From positions 186,001-250,000 of the forward strand of contig PDIP01000001.1 of NCBI GenBank assembly GCA_002811645.1: DNA of 64,000 nt, in the 5' to 3' direction. This DNA comes from Corallochytrium limacisporum Hawaii (lineage: Eukaryota > Protista > Pluriformea). Below the pieces are notes generated by a model, which worked only from the letters and a program-made list of their open reading frames with translations, searched no databases and had not been told where the DNA came from. A program made the position numbers and the translations under genes. Below, piece by piece: positions 18,792 to 28,683 of this stretch (positions are counted from its first letter, which is position 1; every line of letters starts with the position of its first letter).

Positions 18792-20165
18792 ATGGCTGGT
18801 TTGAAGATGCGTTCCTTAACCTACTTCATGGTCGTCACCATCCCAAATACAAGGAATGAATCATTCATCGTTAGAGCCGTAGTTTTGAACCAGTACTCTC
18901 AACCAAAATATACAATGGCCCAAGCAATTTCTTTACACGAACAGGCAATTTTGGCCGCGCAGCCTATTCTGCCTCCTCATGCGCGGGAAGATTCGCCAAT
19001 TCACTCACACAATGAAGACAGCGAAAATGATATAGAACCGGGAATGTCAAGTGCTAGCTCGGACAATGAAGACGCAACTATTGTTGACGAGGACCAGTCA
19101 GGCGATCAGTCCCCGCCCCCAATGCCGCGTAGGATGTCCAGTTTTATGAAGAGACTCCTGCCTCGAAAGCCTTCTACACAGAAAATTCCTCCTCAGGTGG
19201 TCACGGGAACAAAGTACGACCCCAAAGATCCTTACAGACTTAGCCAGGCGGGTATGCTGCAATACGCTGAAGTGCCTCGCCCTTCCAATAGTGCTCAACG
19301 AGATGATAGACCCATCATGGTTCAGATGGAAAGTGTTGTACATACACAGATGAGCTTTAGCCGGTGTATATTTATGGAGCATGTTGTCGCAACACCACGT
19401 GGAATCACTCAGGGAACACTTCGTTGCGATATTCATGAAGGTCAAGGAGAAGTGACCCTCAACCTCAGCTCTAAGGGCAAGATCCCCCTTGGTCATAGCC
19501 GGAGCTGTCCGGCAGAGCGCACCTGCGCGCACGGCCTGACTCTGCCGGCAGAGTACCGCCGCCGTCCAGTTAGCCTTGCGGTCTGCTGTATTGTAGAGAG
19601 TGCCGACGGTGCCATCCTCCTAACCCGTCGCGCCAAGAACATGCGTGCCTTCCCCCATGCTTGGGTGCCCCCGGGTGGCCATGTTGACAAGGGCGAGACC
19701 CTGGTTGATGCCATGGAGCGAGAAGTGCTGGAAGAGACTGGCATTGATTTGGCCCAGGATCGTTCCATCAAACCGACGATGCTTGGTGTTTGGGAGTCTT
19801 TGTACCCCGTGAAGCTGTGCGAAGGCCTGCCCTCCAAGCACCACTTGGTGGTCTATTACCACGTAAAGCTGTCGCAAAAGCGCAAGAAGATCGCCCTGAA
19901 GCTGTCTCCCAACGAGACTGATGCTGCTGCCTGGCTAGATGCTGGGTGCATTCAGGATGTTATCCAAAACAAGAGGACTTCTAAGCGATCTTGCAATGGA
20001 TACCTGGTCGACCCACCTCCCTCCGCCCTGCAGGTCAAGGCCAAGTTCTACACCGGAAATTTATTAGGTGGCGTCAGCCGCTACAACTCCCTTGCCAACA
20101 CACAGCATGTCACCGAGGGCACACGCTTTGCTATTCGGCTCTGGTTGGAAAGTAACAACGCTTAG
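18792..20165 (+). CDS. NUDT17: Nudix hydrolase, NUDT17 family (start may be ATG 18915)
   Basis: Nudix box GGHVDKGETLVDAMEREVLEETG. NUDT17-type flanks LLTRRA..FPHAWVPPGG, LGVWESLYP, HHLVVYY, PNETDAAAWL. Confidence 0.85.
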   Translation: MAGLKMRSLTYFMVVTIPNTRNESFIVRAVVLNQYSQPKYTMAQAISLHEQAILAAQPILPPHAREDSPIHSHNEDSENDIEPGMSSASSDNEDATIVDEDQSGDQSPPPMPRRMSSFMKRLLPRKPSTQKIPPQVVTGTKYDPKDPYRLSQAGMLQYAEVPRPSNSAQRDDRPIMVQMESVVHTQMSFSRCIFMEHVVATPRGITQGTLRCDIHEGQGEVTLNLSSKGKIPLGHSRSCPAERTCAHGLTLPAEYRRRPVSLAVCCIVESADGAILLTRRAKNMRAFPHAWVPPGGHVDKGETLVDAMEREVLEETGIDLAQDRSIKPTMLGVWESLYPVKLCEGLPSKHHLVVYYHVKLSQKRKKIALKLSPNETDAAAWLDAGCIQDVIQNKRTSKRSCNGYLVDPPPSALQVKAKFYTGNLLGGVSRYNSLANTQHVTEGTRFAIRLWLESNNA

Positions 20166-20365: not shown

Positions 20366-22297
20366 TTACCACTCATCATGAATGCAAATCTGAAGACCAC
20401 CGTTCAAGGAACGAATCTCGGACAGCTGTCGTGCAGCTTCATCTGTGATAGCCAACATCAAGCTCGGAGGCAGCTCATTGAGTCTACCATCGTGGCGCAT
20501 AGTGGCGTAGTTATCCAAGATGAAGGAAATACATGCATTCTGCAGTTGGTATGCTCCATGCATGTCTGCTGCAACAAGCAACTCGACAACTGTGTCAGCG
20601 TTGATTTCTTTCGACAGCCTTTCCTCCAACATTTCAGTGAGCCTATTTACAGCATAGTAGTTAGACATACCCAAGAGCAGGATCATTTTGTCCGCGTCGA
20701 GGCCCACTGGCATGCTATCCTTGTACATGAAGTCAATAAAGGCCCTGGCCAACATGGCATCCGCCCCCGGATAATCAAGGACAATTTTGGAATCATTGGC
20801 GTCCATCATTCCGCTATCAAACCGCGCTCGCATCATAGGACAGCGGCGACGGAGAATAGAACGGTGGCACTTTGCCAAGGGCATCTCACCTCCTGCAAGG
20901 AAAATCTCACAATCCTCGAGCTCCCTGGAAGCGTCTGTCAAATCCTTCTGCTCCAAGGCTGTCAGCGGTGGTGTAACATGGATGCGACTGAAGTACAGGC
21001 GCTCGAGCTCAAATCGAGCATGCATGGTCATTGCGCTGTCTGGCGGTACAAGGTCCCCGTATCGAACGTTGGAGATGACTTTGGTTTCATAGCTGTGTGA
21101 TGGCAGGCCAGTACGCATCCTGTTCCACCATGCAATAAATTCCTCTCGGCGTTTCTGTTCCCGCGGATGCCGCACAGCATCATCCTCTTCCCAGTTGTCC
21201 TCTACATCTGTTGAACTTACGGAAATACCCCGCATGCGATTGACATTTTCGCAGTCGTCACCATTTGAAGACGGGCTGGGAACCTTAAGTTTCCGCTTGC
21301 GGAATCCTGTTGAGCATTCAGCCATGTCATCTCCACCTTGTGGTGGTGACCCGACAGAAGCGATGGACGCTGTAGAGTATGTCTCACTTCTCTTTAGAGC
21401 CAGACCATTGCTTCCTTTCCGTGCCTTGTGGCCCCACGGACTGCTAAACTGTAGAGTTCCATCCTTCCGAGTGCATTTTAAAAGTTCTGATCCACAAGGA
21501 AACACCGCTGTACCTCCCTCAGCCAGCAGAATCATGATGGGGCCAATCATCTCGTCAGTGATGGCGGCACTAACATGAATCTTGTCAAACATTCCGTCAT
21601 CAGCAAAATCAAACGTCGGCAGGAGAACATTGTGCAGTCCAATCGACCATCTTGCGGTCGGCAGCAGCTTCCCCAGTGTAGCCCGTACATTACGACGTCC
21701 AAAAGACACAATATCCTGTTGAATGTCAATGCCAACGCAGATTCCCCTGCCTTTACGGGAAGATACAATGTCCGAATCGGCATCGTATTCATAGCAGGCG
21801 AGCCAGCTTCCAAGTGCAGTGAAGTAGCCACACCCACTACCTACGTCCAGGACGCGATCGCCGTATTCAATGTTAAGCTCTTCCAGAACAGTCGCGTACA
21901 TGTGAGGTGCTGAAATGTTGAAGTTGTACCGCGGTAAATGGATGGGGCAATCGTAAAATGCTTCACCCTTCTGGTCTTCCGGTACAAAATCCCCTCGAGA
22001 CAGCCGTGACATTGCGTTCTGCACTCGCGTTGAATGAAGTGCACGGCGCATCCTCAGCTGCTCTAACAGTTCCTGATTTGTGTGGATCTCCGTCGATGCG
22101 CCGACACTTATGAAAGCTGACATTAACCGGATGAATTGTGTATCAAAATGCATGCGCCGGGCCTGCTGGGGAAGGCCTTCCATGTCATCATCTTCATCGC
22201 TGCTACTTCTGTTCTCTGCCCGCAAGGGAGTGCTTTCTTCGGCTCTGTCCTGCTCGTCTAGATGTTGTTGCTGCTGCTGCTGTTCATGCTCACTCAT
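20366..22297 (-). CDS. Protein-L-isoaspartate O-methyltransferase (PIMT/PCMTD-like) domain fused to C-terminal BTB/POZ + BACK-like domain
   Basis: ATG at 22297. PIMT motifs ISAPHMYA, VLDVGSGCGY, FDKIHVSAA, LAEGGTAVFP, VRYGDL. BTB motifs DCEIF, CHRSILRRRCPMMRARFDSGM, FIDFMYKD, LLVAADMHGAYQLQNACISFI. Confidence 0.9.
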   Translation of the reverse strand: MSEHEQQQQQQHLDEQDRAEESTPLRAENRSSSDEDDDMEGLPQQARRMHFDTQFIRLMSAFISVGASTEIHTNQELLEQLRMRRALHSTRVQNAMSRLSRGDFVPEDQKGEAFYDCPIHLPRYNFNISAPHMYATVLEELNIEYGDRVLDVGSGCGYFTALGSWLACYEYDADSDIVSSRKGRGICVGIDIQQDIVSFGRRNVRATLGKLLPTARWSIGLHNVLLPTFDFADDGMFDKIHVSAAITDEMIGPIMILLAEGGTAVFPCGSELLKCTRKDGTLQFSSPWGHKARKGSNGLALKRSETYSTASIASVGSPPQGGDDMAECSTGFRKRKLKVPSPSSNGDDCENVNRMRGISVSSTDVEDNWEEDDAVRHPREQKRREEFIAWWNRMRTGLPSHSYETKVISNVRYGDLVPPDSAMTMHARFELERLYFSRIHVTPPLTALEQKDLTDASRELEDCEIFLAGGEMPLAKCHRSILRRRCPMMRARFDSGMMDANDSKIVLDYPGADAMLARAFIDFMYKDSMPVGLDADKMILLLGMSNYYAVNRLTEMLEERLSKEINADTVVELLVAADMHGAYQLQNACISFILDNYATMRHDGRLNELPPSLMLAITDEAARQLSEIRSLNGGLQICIHDEW

Positions 22298-24088: not shown

Positions 24089-24958
24089 ATGGGCAGATCG
24101 TTCAACATGTTTACCGCGCTCGCGGTCTCGGTCGTTGTTGCCATCGCTGCACTGTCAGCGGTCTCCGGTAGTGAAAGCTTGCGTTACTTCACCGCTTCGG
24201 TGATCGGCATGGTTTTGATCTATGTGAAAACGATCCAGGAATGGTATGCGATTGATCTCTCCGACTATAAAAATATTTATCCAACGGACAAGAAGCTGAA
24301 ACCCGTCTCGGCCAGGGGCGATGGTGACTTTTTTGTTAATTGGTTCGAGCGGTTCCTTCGCCCCGTTCATGGCGCCCTGATCAAGAGGATGGATCTTAAG
24401 GAAACAGACAATGTGCTTGATGCTTGCTGTGGAGCGGGAGGCTGCAGTTTGCGGGTGATAAGCAAGGTCAAGAGCGTGACAGGCGTGGATTTGAGCCCGA
24501 GGAGCATTGAAGCGGCGAAGAAGCGCATTGCAGGGAGTGAAGAAACCACAACCAAGGGAAATGAGACAGCCTTGAAATTCATATGCCAAGACGCTGCTTT
24601 TCTGTCGGAATTCAAGGATGGTCACTTTGATGTCTCGTACACGTCGATGGGCATGCACACCATGCCCCCGAGCACCCGGGTTAAGTTTCTTCGTGAACTC
24701 TGCAGAGTCACAAAGCGAAGTATCTATGTCATCGATTTCACAAAGGATGTGACACCCCTCTCGCTGGCTGGGCTACAGGCCTGCTTTTTGGAGTTCCTTG
24801 GCGGTCCGCAACATTTCGCTGGCTTTCTGAGCTTCCGCGACCTCGGCGGTGTAGAGAACCTGGGAACCATTGTGGAAGATGAGACCGACTGGAAATTGAA
24901 GAAAGTGTACTCAACTAAGGTCCAGGTCGTAAGCGTCGCCGAATTGTGCAAAGCATAG
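24089..24958 (+). CDS. Class I SAM-dependent methyltransferase (UbiE-like) with N-terminal transmembrane segments
   Basis: VLDACCGAGG, VTGVDLS, FICQDA, FDVSYTSMGMH, IYVIDF. Two hydrophobic N-terminal stretches. Confidence 0.85.
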   Translation: MGRSFNMFTALAVSVVVAIAALSAVSGSESLRYFTASVIGMVLIYVKTIQEWYAIDLSDYKNIYPTDKKLKPVSARGDGDFFVNWFERFLRPVHGALIKRMDLKETDNVLDACCGAGGCSLRVISKVKSVTGVDLSPRSIEAAKKRIAGSEETTTKGNETALKFICQDAAFLSEFKDGHFDVSYTSMGMHTMPPSTRVKFLRELCRVTKRSIYVIDFTKDVTPLSLAGLQACFLEFLGGPQHFAGFLSFRDLGGVENLGTIVEDETDWKLKKVYSTKVQVVSVAELCKA

Positions 24959-25050: not shown

Positions 25051-28000
25051 TCAGAACTTCATTGCAATGGTGATCAAGGATTTGATTCCAGTTAGCGAGC
25101 TCTTAAACTTGTGCAGATTCATCTGGGTTGTGATCTGACCCGTGTATCTGTATGCAGTCTGGAGATCGTTGGCCTGGATATACTGGATGAGCTGTGTTAA
25201 CATGCCCATCTCAGCATCCGTAATGTTATCCTCCCGCATGAGATCAAACATGGGCTGCAGCTTGCTCTCGACATCCTGAAGTTTGCGGGTGATGGTGGAA
25301 TCATTCTTGGCCTTACCGCGGTCAATCAGACCCTGTAAAACGTCATGGATCGGCTTAAACTTTTCCAAGATTGGTTTCGGTGGTGCAGGCGGCTGAGCAG
25401 GCGGCTGCGGTGCCACGGGCTGAGCAGGACCGCCAGGAGGTGCTCCGGCCACAGCACCGGGGGGTTGCTGACCGTATTGAGCGACGGAACCAGTACCGTA
25501 GGAAGCCGCACCAGGCATCGGTGGAGTACCATAGCCAGCACCGGGAGCTGGAGCGGTCTGTCCCGGGTAACCCGGAGCAGGTGCACCACCTACGGGTGGG
25601 GCGACGGGCGACATGATGGCGGCTGCCTGTGGGCGGTGCGACTGGGACGCCTTCTTCTTGCGTTCAATAATGGGTGGCTCGTTCCAACCTCCCGTGCCTG
25701 CTGGGTTTGTCGGTTGAGACAAGCTGCCACCACCTGCAGCAGGTGGGTGTGGAGCGGCGGACGGCGGTGGGGCACCCGCCACGGCTGGAGGCGGACCAGA
25801 GGGCGGTGGTGCGCTAGCAGTCGGCGGTGCTGCAGGTTGCAGGATGTTGGCTGTCGGGGGAGCGGGCTGGCTGTACGATGAAGCTTGTTGGAAGTGAGCC
25901 GGAACAGCCGGAGCACCGCCAAAGGCCGGGGGAGGCGCAGTTTGGGTCGGAGGAGCACCGTAGGTCGGCGGGCCACCCATGGCCGGAGGCGGAGCAGCAC
26001 CGCCCATGGCCGGCGGAGGTGCTCCGTAGCTGGGCCTTGAAGGAGGCTGTTGTCCATACTGTCCATAGGAAGTCTGCTGCTGGCCGAAGCCTCCATAGCC
26101 AGTCTGCTGTGGCTGCTGATATCCCGTTGATGTACGTGATTGTTGACCATACCCACCAGTTTGTTGCTGCTGCCCGTACTGTGCAGTCTGGGCCTGAGCC
26201 ACTGGTGCATTCTGTACTGTATATGGAGCCTCCGGAGGTCCTCCCACCATCTGTTGCAATTGAGGCTTGAGTGCATGGTAGATGCGATCCCGGATGTTAC
26301 CAAGGTGGTGATTCTGCTCCACCGGCACCGGTCCACATAGCTTAATTTGCTGCATGGCCTCCAGAAGCATGCCTTGGTCAGTCAAGGTTTCCGCATACCG
26401 GATGATATGCTCGACAGCCTCCGTGCTGGTAATGGTTACTTGATCAGAACGCACAGCATTTACCGCACCCGCCAGCACATTAACCTTCTCCATCAATGAG
26501 TGTATGTCCTCGACAGACGGCTTTGGTGGCATCAGACGCAGAAGCATACGCAGCATGCCATCTAGGTTACCACCTGCAATGTAGATCAAGGCTGCGTCCA
26601 CGCTCTCGTTGGCTTCCTCCAGACGCTCAGCAAGCATTATGCAAAGGTTGCTGAATTCTTCAGCCGATCCGTAGGTCACGAGCATGGCAAAGGTTTCACG
26701 CCAATTCTCAAGCTTCGAGAACTGCACAAGGTCACCCCAGTTCCCAGTTAGGACCAATCCCAGCACTGTGGCGAAATCGGTGCTGCAGCTTCCAAGATAT
26801 GCATCTCGTGCACGATTCAATAGCTCAGGACCACCGGCCATCGCCAGGATAAGGGCATCAGCGTGTCGACCGGCCGCAATTGACAGGGAAACGGCAGTCT
26901 GGAAGTCACCTGCAATCAGAGCGCGTAGGATCGGTCCGGTGTCGCCGTCGTGGAGAGCAATGCCAAAGCTTGAAGTAATGGCAGGCAAATGACTGCCGTT
27001 CGCACCGGTTGCAACCTGTTTGCCAATACTGGCGAACACGTCACCATCAGCACCATCTGCTCCCGGCGAAGGACCAGTTCCATTCATTTGTGTTCCCGTC
27101 TGTTCTTCGCCAGTAAGGTCGGCGGTTGAAGCACTCTGCTGGACTGGCTTTTGTGCAATGTTCAGTTCGCTCTGCATGCGGTTAGCCAGAGCATCACCTT
27201 CCAATGCCGCTTCCTTAACCTTACGATACGCCATGGAATCCGTAGAGTAGCCCATTAGCTCCAGCTGCGATTTCCTGGGCTGTGCATCGAAATTAACTTT
27301 CAAGAAACCCCATAACAGCCTCTCACTGTCAGAGTCAGCAGCACGCAGACGGCTGTCGCACAGACTACCGAAGTCCTGGGACTGTTGAGACAACTCGACA
27401 GCCTTGGAAACGAGTTCCTGTTCCGTGACGGTCTGCTGGACCTTGATCTGACCACCAGTTGGCTGCGAAAATTCATATAGCTTGCCACCAAAACCAAATA
27501 CAGCACCACAAGGGCGTTTCAACCACTTTGGCGGTTTCACCTTGGGAGCAGCAGTAGGCTGCTGACCGTACTGTCCCTGTGCCTGGGCGTCACTGGCACC
27601 TCCGCTGGCTTCGAGAATGTCTCCTACACGAACAGTGCCGTCGAAGCTACCGCAACTAAATATCGACGGGTTGCTTGGACACCAGTTCACATCGAAACAC
27701 CAGTTCTTGGCCTGAGGGAGTTCTTCGGTCATTTCAGCCGTGTTCGGATTCCACAGCAGAAGGCGATTATCCTTACCACAACTGAGTAGCATATCGGAAT
27801 CCGCGGGGTTCCATGCAAGGTCCAGAACTCCGCTCTGGTGTCCCTGCATGGTCCGCAGCGGGCTGTAGGCATTGCGCAATTCCCATATCTGAATGACAGG
27901 ATGACGGTCATCCTCGCTTGCAGTGGCCAGTTGAGTCGCTTCATCAGGGTGCCACTGCAGAGCGCTATTACGCATCCGTGCATTGTTGTCGTGGAAGTTT

Positions 28001-28683
28001 ATCACGGCACGGTTTGCACGCAAGTCCCAGACAGTGGACATACCATTGATATTGGTCGAACCGAGAATGTGCTGAACCTGGCGGTTCCACTGCAGAGCTG
28101 TAATGTCAGCCGGCTCGGTGCTACTCTGACCAGGAGCCATAGGCTTGCCTGTGTTCAAGTCCCAAATGAATATTTCAGAGCGGCCAGCACCAGATGCCAT
28201 CAAGTTCGGCATGAATGTGTTGAAGTCTAGAGTGTTTACACCACTGCCATGTCCCCTCAGCTGTGCAACAGGAGCCATTGCTTGCCCGCTGGCATTTCCT
28301 GCGAGGGCCTTTGCATCCCACATTCCAATGCTTCCGTCTGAGAAACCACCGGCAATCACGCCGTACCCGAACCTACCGGCAGACATGCCAAATGAGCCCC
28401 ACTGGAGGGTATTAAATCGTTCCTGGCATGTCGTCTTTCCCAAACACTTGAGCTCAGGTCCCCGGAGCTGAGCTTTTGCAAAGAAGTCATCGCCTCCGGC
28501 TTCAGCAGGCTGGGGAGCAGGAGCATCTCCCGTCTCCAGACTGTACACTTCAAGTTCCGAAGAGGTGCTAAAACTTGCGTCGAGCTGTTTCGCAGCTGTA
28601 CCAGCTGCAACCAATGTCGTGCTCTTCAGCTGCCCGGGGCTGAAAGCAGTCTCACTGCTCTTGTACACTTGTTTAAACTGCAT
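25051..28683 (-). CDS. SEC31: COPII coat protein Sec31
   Basis: 1210 aa. WD40 region with WNRQVQHIL, WHPDEATQL, PVIQIWELRNA; PPKWLKRPCGAVFGFGGKL; solenoid; Pro-rich region; C-terminal helical domain. Confidence 0.97.
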   Translation of the reverse strand: MQFKQVYKSSETAFSPGQLKSTTLVAAGTAAKQLDASFSTSSELEVYSLETGDAPAPQPAEAGGDDFFAKAQLRGPELKCLGKTTCQERFNTLQWGSFGMSAGRFGYGVIAGGFSDGSIGMWDAKALAGNASGQAMAPVAQLRGHGSGVNTLDFNTFMPNLMASGAGRSEIFIWDLNTGKPMAPGQSSTEPADITALQWNRQVQHILGSTNINGMSTVWDLRANRAVINFHDNNARMRNSALQWHPDEATQLATASEDDRHPVIQIWELRNAYSPLRTMQGHQSGVLDLAWNPADSDMLLSCGKDNRLLLWNPNTAEMTEELPQAKNWCFDVNWCPSNPSIFSCGSFDGTVRVGDILEASGGASDAQAQGQYGQQPTAAPKVKPPKWLKRPCGAVFGFGGKLYEFSQPTGGQIKVQQTVTEQELVSKAVELSQQSQDFGSLCDSRLRAADSDSERLLWGFLKVNFDAQPRKSQLELMGYSTDSMAYRKVKEAALEGDALANRMQSELNIAQKPVQQSASTADLTGEEQTGTQMNGTGPSPGADGADGDVFASIGKQVATGANGSHLPAITSSFGIALHDGDTGPILRALIAGDFQTAVSLSIAAGRHADALILAMAGGPELLNRARDAYLGSCSTDFATVLGLVLTGNWGDLVQFSKLENWRETFAMLVTYGSAEEFSNLCIMLAERLEEANESVDAALIYIAGGNLDGMLRMLLRLMPPKPSVEDIHSLMEKVNVLAGAVNAVRSDQVTITSTEAVEHIIRYAETLTDQGMLLEAMQQIKLCGPVPVEQNHHLGNIRDRIYHALKPQLQQMVGGPPEAPYTVQNAPVAQAQTAQYGQQQQTGGYGQQSRTSTGYQQPQQTGYGGFGQQQTSYGQYGQQPPSRPSYGAPPPAMGGAAPPPAMGGPPTYGAPPTQTAPPPAFGGAPAVPAHFQQASSYSQPAPPTANILQPAAPPTASAPPPSGPPPAVAGAPPPSAAPHPPAAGGGSLSQPTNPAGTGGWNEPPIIERKKKASQSHRPQAAAIMSPVAPPVGGAPAPGYPGQTAPAPGAGYGTPPMPGAASYGTGSVAQYGQQPPGAVAGAPPGGPAQPVAPQPPAQPPAPPKPILEKFKPIHDVLQGLIDRGKAKNDSTITRKLQDVESKLQPMFDLMREDNITDAEMGMLTQLIQYIQANDLQTAYRYTGQITTQMNLHKFKSSLTGIKSLITIAMKF

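What the first reader, a model, noticed from the sequence alone, without database searches (positions are those of the whole stretch)
20366..22297. PIMT-BTB fusion: candidate Cullin-3 ubiquitin-ligase receptor for isoaspartate-damaged proteins
Seen: one uninterrupted ORF joins a PIMT fold carrying the substrate- and SAM-binding motifs (ISAPHMY, DVGSGCG, FDKIHVSAA, GG..VFP, VRYGDL) to a SPOP-type BTB with its following 3-box/BACK helices (about 20440-20920). Known: such BTB domains are CUL3 adaptors. Animal PCMTD1 couples a PIMT-like domain to CUL5 through a SOCS box and is proposed to route isoAsp proteins to degradation. Inference: this may be an independent CUL3-based solution for degrading isoAsp proteins, or an enzyme that chooses between repair and destruction. 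I do not know of a characterised example.
Basis: partly seen in the sequence, partly recalled or inferred. Interest (0 to 1): 0.85.

Follow-up and report, generated by a model that had tools for sequence, protein, structure and literature searches.

The report
Ancient cullin-3 cousin of PCMTD1
This gene joins a protein-damage-recognising enzyme fold to a standard ubiquitin-ligase docking module; it belongs to an apparently unstudied family in algae and amoebae that is related to human PCMTD1, which suggests that tagging age-damaged (isoaspartate) proteins for destruction is much older than animals.

Summary
In detail: one intronless 643-aa ORF (20366-22297, minus strand) with a PIMT fold (residues 70-421, split by a private ~120-aa disordered insertion) and a SPOP-like BTB/3-box/BACK. 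Two probable RNA assemblies cover it without joints. It is not a one-off: the same architecture occurs in about 140 retrieved sequences (some near-duplicates) from green and red algae, a glaucophyte, Amoebozoa and a heterolobosean, and groups by lineage. I found no paper on it. The PIMT domain forms a clade with animal PCMTD (100/100; a union with canonical PCMT is rejected, AU p=0.002). The channel Thr of active PIMTs, which is His in catalytically dead PCMTD1, is Asn in 108/110 members. The genome (probably Corallochytrium) has CUL3, a separate canonical PIMT, and no detected CUL5 or PCMTD. Relatives of the same domain carry SOCS or RING modules instead. Best reading: a SAM-dependent isoAsp-reading CUL3 receptor from an old PCMTD-like reader lineage whose ligase module was swapped several times. 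Binding, catalysis and ubiquitylation are inferred, not shown. The scan noted only this same stretch before.

The parts
20366..22297 (-). Single-exon gene, 643 aa, PIMT-like domain + BTB/3-box/BACK
   Evidence: contigs of two probable RNA runs cover it with no joints
22169..22297 (-). Acidic, Gln-rich disordered N-terminus (res 1-43)
   Evidence: sequence; pLDDT about 42-53
22103..22168 (-). N-terminal helix (res 44-65), at the position of a conserved helix in green-algal homologues
21449..22090 (-). PIMT-like seven-beta-strand core (res 70-283): SAM motif I (res 150-157, 21827-21850), post-I Asp191, Asn223, motif II/III
21896..21919 (-). Pre-motif I / isoAsp pocket NISAPHMY; Asn127 (21917-21919) sits at the channel position that is Thr in PCMT1 and His in PCMTD1
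21092..21448 (-). About 120-aa Ser/Arg/Gly/Glu-rich disordered insertion in the beta6-beta7 loop, seen only in this copy
   Evidence: motif III to post-III spacing 150 aa versus median 30 in 132 homologues, next longest 73; pLDDT under 50 for 293-376
21050..21091 (-). Last PIMT strand and post-III motif VRYGDL (res 403-416)
20963..21049 (-). Linker helix between PIMT and BTB (res 417-445)
   Evidence: helix 421-437 with pLDDT about 90; P419 invariant in 110 sequences
20603..20962 (-). SPOP-like BTB domain (res 446-565) including the first helix; phi-x-D motif M497-M498-D499 at 20801-20809
20381..20602 (-). 3-box/BACK helices (res 566-639)

Best explanation
The protein is a substrate receptor of a Cullin-3 RING ligase. 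It probably dimerises through the BTB and docks on the CUL3 N-terminus through the phi-x-D/E loop and the 3-box. Its PIMT-like domain binds SAM and, with SAM as a structural cofactor, binds L-isoaspartyl sites in damaged proteins without methylating them efficiently, so that they are ubiquitylated and degraded while a separate canonical PIMT does repair. The reader domain shares ancestry with animal PCMTD1/2: one early-eukaryotic duplicate of PIMT became a reader and was coupled to BTB/CUL3 (algae, amoebae, a heterolobosean, this organism), SOCS/CUL5 (animals) or RING domains (Pelomyxa, a kinetoplastid). Shown: the architecture, its conservation, the clade, the motifs, and CUL3 in the genome. 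Inferred: CUL3 binding, SAM and isoAsp binding, loss of catalysis, ubiquitylation.
For: Architecture conserved in 143 retrieved sequences with both domains, some near-duplicates and one probable gene-model fusion. Named members: Chlorophyta, Rhodophyta (Galdieria, Bangiopsis, Erythrolobus), Cyanophora, Amoebozoa (Acanthamoeba, Heterostelium, Physarum, Arcella, Difflugia, Cavostelium, Flabellula) and Pharyngomonas. Greens, reds and amoebozoans each form one group (100/99, 99/98, 99/95). A profile built only from BTB-family members scores human PCMTD1 180 bits and human PCMT1 117 bits. Trichoplax PCMTD1 hits the window gene (E 9e-8) better than this genome's canonical PIMT (E 9e-4). Careful tree with prokaryote outgroup: Asn-type + His-type clade 100/100; BTB-family + canonical PCMT rejected, p-AU 0.002. 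Shared derived sites: Asn instead of the GDG Asp in 40/42 BTB and 20/25 His-type rows versus 0 of 27 canonical and prokaryotic rows, and loss of the VP of V.YVPL. Channel Thr is Asn in 108/110; in PMC12590147 that Thr is necessary for PCMT1 activity and is His in PCMTD1, which binds isoAsp in a SAM-dependent way (abstract) and does not methylate. SAM motif D-x-G-x-G-x-G has all four positions invariant in 110/110. BTB phi-x-[DE]: M or L 99/110, D or E 106/110, aligned to SPOP's M-E-E; the motif is defined in PMC3616122. The genome has CUL3 with the H2 residues F/Y/Y/L in the human spacing, a separate canonical PIMT, and no CUL5 among four cullins. Sister domains are fused to RING or SOCS modules.
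Against: No binding or activity data exist. Ubiquitylation has not been demonstrated even for CRL5-PCMTD1 (PMC12590147). The effect of Asn at the channel is untested, and a few canonical-clade PIMTs also carry Asn there (P0103-P0106). The post-III half of the pocket is diverged, so the ligand may have changed. As a single sequence or model, the window protein is no closer to PCMTD1 than to canonical PIMTs (phmmer 62 bits Plasmodium PIMT versus 42 PCMTD1; Z 28.2 versus 25.1). The window copy has Asp rather than Glu in phi-x-E, deviates at four family-conserved sites (R120H, G243S, C246I, P247T) and is the longest branch. His-type rows entered the tree as hits of the BTB-family profile, which may bias toward similarity.
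Confidence: 0.5

Rival explanations
1. A CUL3 receptor whose PIMT-like domain reads something other than generic isoAsp: a specific partner protein, D-Asp, a succinimide or a C-terminal carboxylate, possibly gated by SAM level.
For: Both halves of the pocket differ from PCMT1: Asn at the channel and [YF][GS][DE]L in place of YVPL, plus a family-specific Arg at window position 120 (100/110) and R412 (107/110). Red-algal members change SAPH to SAPE or SSPD/SSPE.
Against: The ISAP core is nearly invariant (S 110/110, A 110/110, P 109/110). The sister protein PCMTD1, also diverged at these sites, still binds isoAsp specifically (PMC12590147).
Confidence: 0.2
2. An active methyltransferase tethered to CUL3: it methylates isoAsp and either repairs or, through the ester/succinimide intermediate, commits the substrate to ubiquitylation.
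For: SAM motifs are more canonical than PCMTD1's (motif I Asp in 42/42 versus Asn in 23/25 His-type). SAPHM[HY] is retained (His in 104/110). Asn is smaller than His and may leave the channel open.
Against: The channel Thr is necessary for PCMT1 activity and is Thr in all 27 canonical and prokaryotic rows of the tree set. Restoring Thr in PCMTD1 does not restore activity. A canonical PIMT is kept alongside. All NCBIfam pimt cut-offs are failed (90 versus 159 bits).
Confidence: 0.17
3. The BTB serves only for dimerisation or scaffolding and the protein is not part of a ubiquitin ligase.
For: Many BTB proteins do not act with CUL3 (own knowledge). The window has Asp for the Glu of phi-x-E, and the BACK hit is under the Pfam cut-off.
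Against: Best sequence and structure matches are CUL3 adaptors (SPOP, KBTBD2, KLHL). The phi-x-acidic motif and 3-box helices are conserved family-wide. The same reader domain is repeatedly fused to other E3 modules.
Confidence: 0.08
4. The family is functional but this copy is degenerating or has been repurposed.
For: Longest branch (1.55-1.81), private 120-aa insertion, four conserved positions changed.
Against: Intact ORF, probably transcribed in two strains; of three differences between them in the ORF, two are synonymous and one (Q283H) lies at the insertion edge. The model folds both domains at pLDDT 90 or more.
Confidence: 0.05

Closest known systems
Human PCMTD1/PCMTD2 (CRL5 receptor; PDB 9OMA; PMC12590147)
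   Same: PIMT-like domain of the same clade, followed by a cullin-adaptor module; channel Thr replaced; Asn at the GDG position; V.YVPL altered.
   Different: BTB/3-box (CUL3, direct) instead of SOCS box (Elongin BC-CUL5); Asn instead of His at the channel; motif I keeps Asp; found in algae, amoebae and a heterolobosean, not in animals.
Canonical PIMT/PCMT1 (PF01135, TIGR00080)
   Same: Fold (Z 28, rmsd 2.2), SAM motif I, SAPHM pocket.
   Different: Separate clade; TISAPH becomes NISAPH; GDG and V.YVPL lost; below NCBIfam cut-offs; fused to BTB; the genome keeps its own canonical PIMT.
SPOP / plant BPM and BTB-Kelch CUL3 adaptors
   Same: N-terminal reader domain + BTB + 3-box/BACK; phi-x-acidic motif.
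[quoted passage not shown]
   Same: Concept of a cullin receptor for spontaneous protein damage.
   Different: Unrelated fold, cullin and lesion.

Membership tests
PCMTD1/2 (CRL5 receptors) | PIMT-like domain in the PCMTD clade | tested here: met
   In the wider Asn+His clade (100/100; AU). It is a sister or paraphyletic relative, not inside the animal PCMTD group (98/97).
PCMTD1/2 (CRL5 receptors) | SOCS box (BC-box + Cul5-box) | tested here: not met
   No SOCS hit; BTB instead; no CUL5 found in the genome.
PCMTD1/2 (CRL5 receptors) | His at the SAM-substrate channel | tested here: not met
   Asn127; Asn in 108/110.
PCMTD1/2 (CRL5 receptors) | SAM-dependent isoAsp binding without methylation | not testable with these tools
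   Needs binding and activity assays.
Canonical PIMT/PCMT1 | PIMT seven-beta-strand fold with SAM motifs | tested here: met
Canonical PIMT/PCMT1 | Channel Thr (T-I-S-x-P), GDG, and [YF]VP[LM] | tested here: not met
   N127, N223, YGDL
Canonical PIMT/PCMT1 | Equivalog score cut-off (TIGR00080) and placement in the canonical clade | tested here: not met
   90 versus 159 bits; AU p=0.002
Canonical PIMT/PCMT1 | IsoAsp methyltransferase activity | not testable with these tools
   Needs assay.
CUL3 BTB adaptors (SPOP/KLHL type) | BTB fold followed by 3-box/BACK helices | tested here: met
   Pfam BTB over cut-off; model aligns to SPOP over 167-177 aa, Z 15.7-16.2.
CUL3 BTB adaptors (SPOP/KLHL type) | phi-x-E motif in the alpha3-beta4 loop | tested here: inconclusive
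   phi = Met; third residue Asp in the window, D 58 and E 48 of 110 in the family.
CUL3 BTB adaptors (SPOP/KLHL type) | CUL3 partner in the same genome with conserved helix H2 | tested here: met
CUL3 BTB adaptors (SPOP/KLHL type) | Physical CUL3 binding and substrate ubiquitylation | not testable with these tools
   No complex prediction or assay available.

The most novel reading that the evidence does not exclude
Early eukaryotes already split isoAsp control into repair (PIMT) and destruction (a SAM-dependent pseudo-PIMT reader wired to ubiquitin ligases). The BTB/CUL3 form is the old state, animal PCMTD-SOCS/CUL5 is a later module swap, and single-chain RING forms arose separately. These simpler receptors would allow the first direct demonstration of an isoAsp degron.
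Probability: 0.35. Interest if true: 0.8.

Novelty: new variant of a known kind. Interest (0 to 1): 0.66.

Why it matters
Whether isoAsp is a true degron is open: PCMTD1 binds isoAsp, but ubiquitylation has not been shown, and its authors ask whether other E3s do the same (PMC12590147). This family offers simpler systems (BTB-CUL3 without Elongin BC, and single-chain RING fusions) in culturable algae and amoebae. Repeated coupling of one reader clade to three kinds of E3 module is independent comparative support for the degradation model and would move its origin from animals to early eukaryotes.

Tried and rejected
Gene-model or assembly fusion: rejected (single ORF, contigs without joints, many homologues). 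Independent origin from PCMT1: rejected. Prokaryotic or viral source: the only two genome-contig hits are eukaryotic-looking, intron-containing stretches inside bacterial MAGs; the two best viral hits are canonical TISAPH PIMTs; that scan used one exact peptide pattern, so it is not proof of absence. Transfer from algae into this organism: the window copy falls on the archaeplastid side (99/85; 99/95), but grouping with Amoebozoa is not rejected on two domains (p=0.084; p=0.039 on PIMT alone) and grouping with Bryopsidales is rejected (p=0.017); these groups were named after seeing the trees and the branch is long, so the origin is unresolved. Cereblon-like pocket in the RING-PIMT-Yippee relatives: no match to cereblon; only a weak YPEL5 match. 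Profile A3 versus PDB was set aside as biased because it held His-type rows; one search replaces it. The careful 99-row tree did not finish (quick tree shown); a 48-row careful tree was used. The SOCS-box search of the genome was blank and uninformative. Six literature searches aimed at this architecture or at PCMTD/isoAsp ligases found no description of PIMT-BTB. Warmack et al. 2022 (PMID 35486881) could not be read and may discuss PCMTD relatives.

Full report
Observation. The window holds one open frame at 20366-22297 on the minus strand, 643 aa. Pfam gives PCMT at 73-271 (87 bits) and BTB at 462-563 (37 bits), both over cut-off, and a weak BPM/SPOP BACK hit at 569-594. An AlphaFold2 model from a 110-sequence alignment (pLDDT 79, pTM 0.73) shows a complete PIMT fold whose last strand (403-410) follows a disordered insertion. 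The model aligns to PIMTs at Z about 28 over residues 70-421 and to SPOP BTB/3-box/BACK at Z about 16 over 446-629. Two sequencing runs, guessed to be RNA, each give one contig over 18882 to about 22420 with no joints and empty flanks. That contig also spans the convergent NUDT17-like neighbour, so it shows absence of splicing rather than a single transcript. The second run differs at three ORF positions, two synonymous and one at the insertion edge.

Organism. The genome is 24,109,830 bases in 286 contigs and the protein is in EukProt. Size and near-absence of introns match Corallochytrium limacisporum (24.1 Mb, 0.0 introns per CDS kbp; PMC5560861). This is an inference; no tool named the organism. 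It encodes a separate canonical PIMT with TISAPHMH and VRYVPL and four cullins. Two were checked against the PDB as CUL3 and CUL2; the other two look like CUL1 and CUL4 by sequence (own knowledge). No CUL5 and no PCMTD were found. The CUL3 keeps the helix-H2 F/Y/Y/L residues that contact BTB adaptors.

The family. The first search found the same architecture in Bryopsis, Ostreobium and Caulerpa. Profile searches extended it to many chlorophytes, red algae, Cyanophora, Amoebozoa and the heterolobosean Pharyngomonas. In all, 143 retrieved sequences cover both domains, including near-duplicates and one probable gene-model fusion. The ESM Atlas has an automatically named cluster of 62 members, 98% with BTB. 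No named animal, fungal or land-plant member appeared, but the searches scored only the top 8000 candidates, so absence is not shown. On a two-domain tree greens, reds and amoebozoans each form a supported group, as expected of old vertical inheritance. The window copy is the longest branch and alone has the ~120-aa insertion. It lies on the archaeplastid side, but neither transfer nor vertical descent is established.

Relation to PCMTD1. A profile made only from BTB-family members scores human PCMTD1 at 180 bits and PCMT1 at 117. Trichoplax PCMTD1 finds the window gene ahead of the canonical PIMT in this genome. With prokaryotic PIMTs as outgroup, BTB-fused and His-type (PCMTD-like) domains form one clade: 100 SH-aLRT in the 99-row quick tree and 100/100 in a 48-row careful tree. 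Forcing the BTB family together with canonical PCMT is rejected (p-AU 0.002). The two groups share Asn at the GDG position and loss of the VP in V.YVPL. Whether PCMTD is sister to or nested in the BTB family is not resolved. Against this, the window protein alone is not closer to PCMTD1 by phmmer or by structure, and the His-type rows came from searches with the BTB profile.

Module swapping. The same clade carries other E3 modules: SOCS boxes, PIMT-PIMT-RING in Pelomyxa, PIMT-kinase-RING, RING-PIMT-Yippee in the kinetoplastid Apiculatamorpha and PIMT-BTB-BTB. Several His-type members, for example a diatom-dominated cluster, have C-terminal regions with no Pfam hit. SOCS boxes are described as a later, holozoan addition to cullin ligases (PMC4327156), which fits BTB or RING coupling being older; the order of events is an inference.

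Mechanism. PMC12590147 reports that PCMTD1 binds isoAsp when bound to SAM, does not methylate, and has His in place of a channel Thr that PCMT1 needs; it also states that ubiquitylation was not demonstrated. In the BTB family that position is Asn in 108/110, the SAM motif is invariant, and the SAP core is kept. The BTB has the phi-x-acidic motif (Met-Met-Asp here) aligned to SPOP's Met-Glu-Glu. The most economical reading is a dimeric CUL3 receptor whose SAM-loaded pseudo-PIMT domain captures isoAsp proteins for ubiquitylation, beside a canonical PIMT that repairs (0.50). Rivals: a different ligand (0.20), an active tethered methyltransferase (0.17), a BTB used without CUL3 (0.08), a decaying copy (0.05). 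Architecture, clade, motifs and partner presence are shown; binding, catalysis and degradation are inferred.

Novelty. The architecture sits in public databases under automatic names, such as 'BTB/POZ domain containing protein' for Acanthamoeba and 'protein-L-isoaspartate O-methyltransferase' for algae. My literature searches found no description of it; one key paper could not be read, and most subscription journals are not covered. It fails membership of PCMTD proper (no SOCS box, no channel His) and of canonical PIMT, yet probably works like PCMTD1. I class it as a new variant of a known kind, interest 0.66.

Noticed in passing
P0171, P0173, P0178, P0200: RING + Asn-type PIMT (split by a ~150-aa insert) + Yippee/Mis18 zinc domain(s) in one chain; P0171 is from the kinetoplastid Apiculatamorpha spiralis. 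Weak match to YPEL5, none to cereblon.
   Followed up: partly
P0152 (Pelomyxa schiedti KAH3759527.1), P0149, P0174, P0169, P0185, P0217: PIMT-like domains fused to RING fingers (PIMT-PIMT-RING; PIMT-kinase-RING; RING-PIMT): candidate single-chain isoAsp E3 ligases.
   Followed up: partly
P0240, P0206, P0241, P0244, P0245, P0299, P0300: Non-animal-looking His-type PCMTD-like proteins, including a diatom-dominated Atlas cluster; those scanned in Pfam have C-terminal regions without a hit.
   Followed up: partly
L003:1489-2238 (-), G000:C201: The genome's canonical PIMT ORF starts with a hydrophobic, signal-peptide-like stretch before a second Met at residue 28; it may be dual-targeted or the start may be the second Met.
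   Followed up: no
window 18792-20165 (+): NUDT17-like Nudix gene (E 8e-32) convergent with the PIMT-BTB gene; the contigs of both runs join the two and begin at 18882, downstream of the first ATG.
   Followed up: partly
L018:772-2827: An intron-containing, Bryopsidales-like PIMT-BTB gene lies inside a record labelled as a bacterial MAG chromosome (OZ245997.1): probable algal contamination or chimeric assembly. L019 looks eukaryotic too.
   Followed up: partly
P0235 (L053:2001-5984, GCA_015500005.1): Canonical Thr-type PIMT lacking its last strand joined to Kelch-BTB in one gene model; probably a fusion of two neighbouring genes by the annotation.
   Followed up: partly
P0103-P0106: B-box + PIMT proteins in the canonical clade that also carry Asn at the channel position.
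   Followed up: no
L020:2998-3663, L021: Giant-virus MAG contigs encode canonical TISAPH-type PIMTs.
   Followed up: no
window 24089-24958 (+) and 25051-28683 (-): Neighbours: a methyltransferase with a hydrophobic N-terminus and an intronless Sec31-like WD40 gene; no evident functional link.
   Followed up: no
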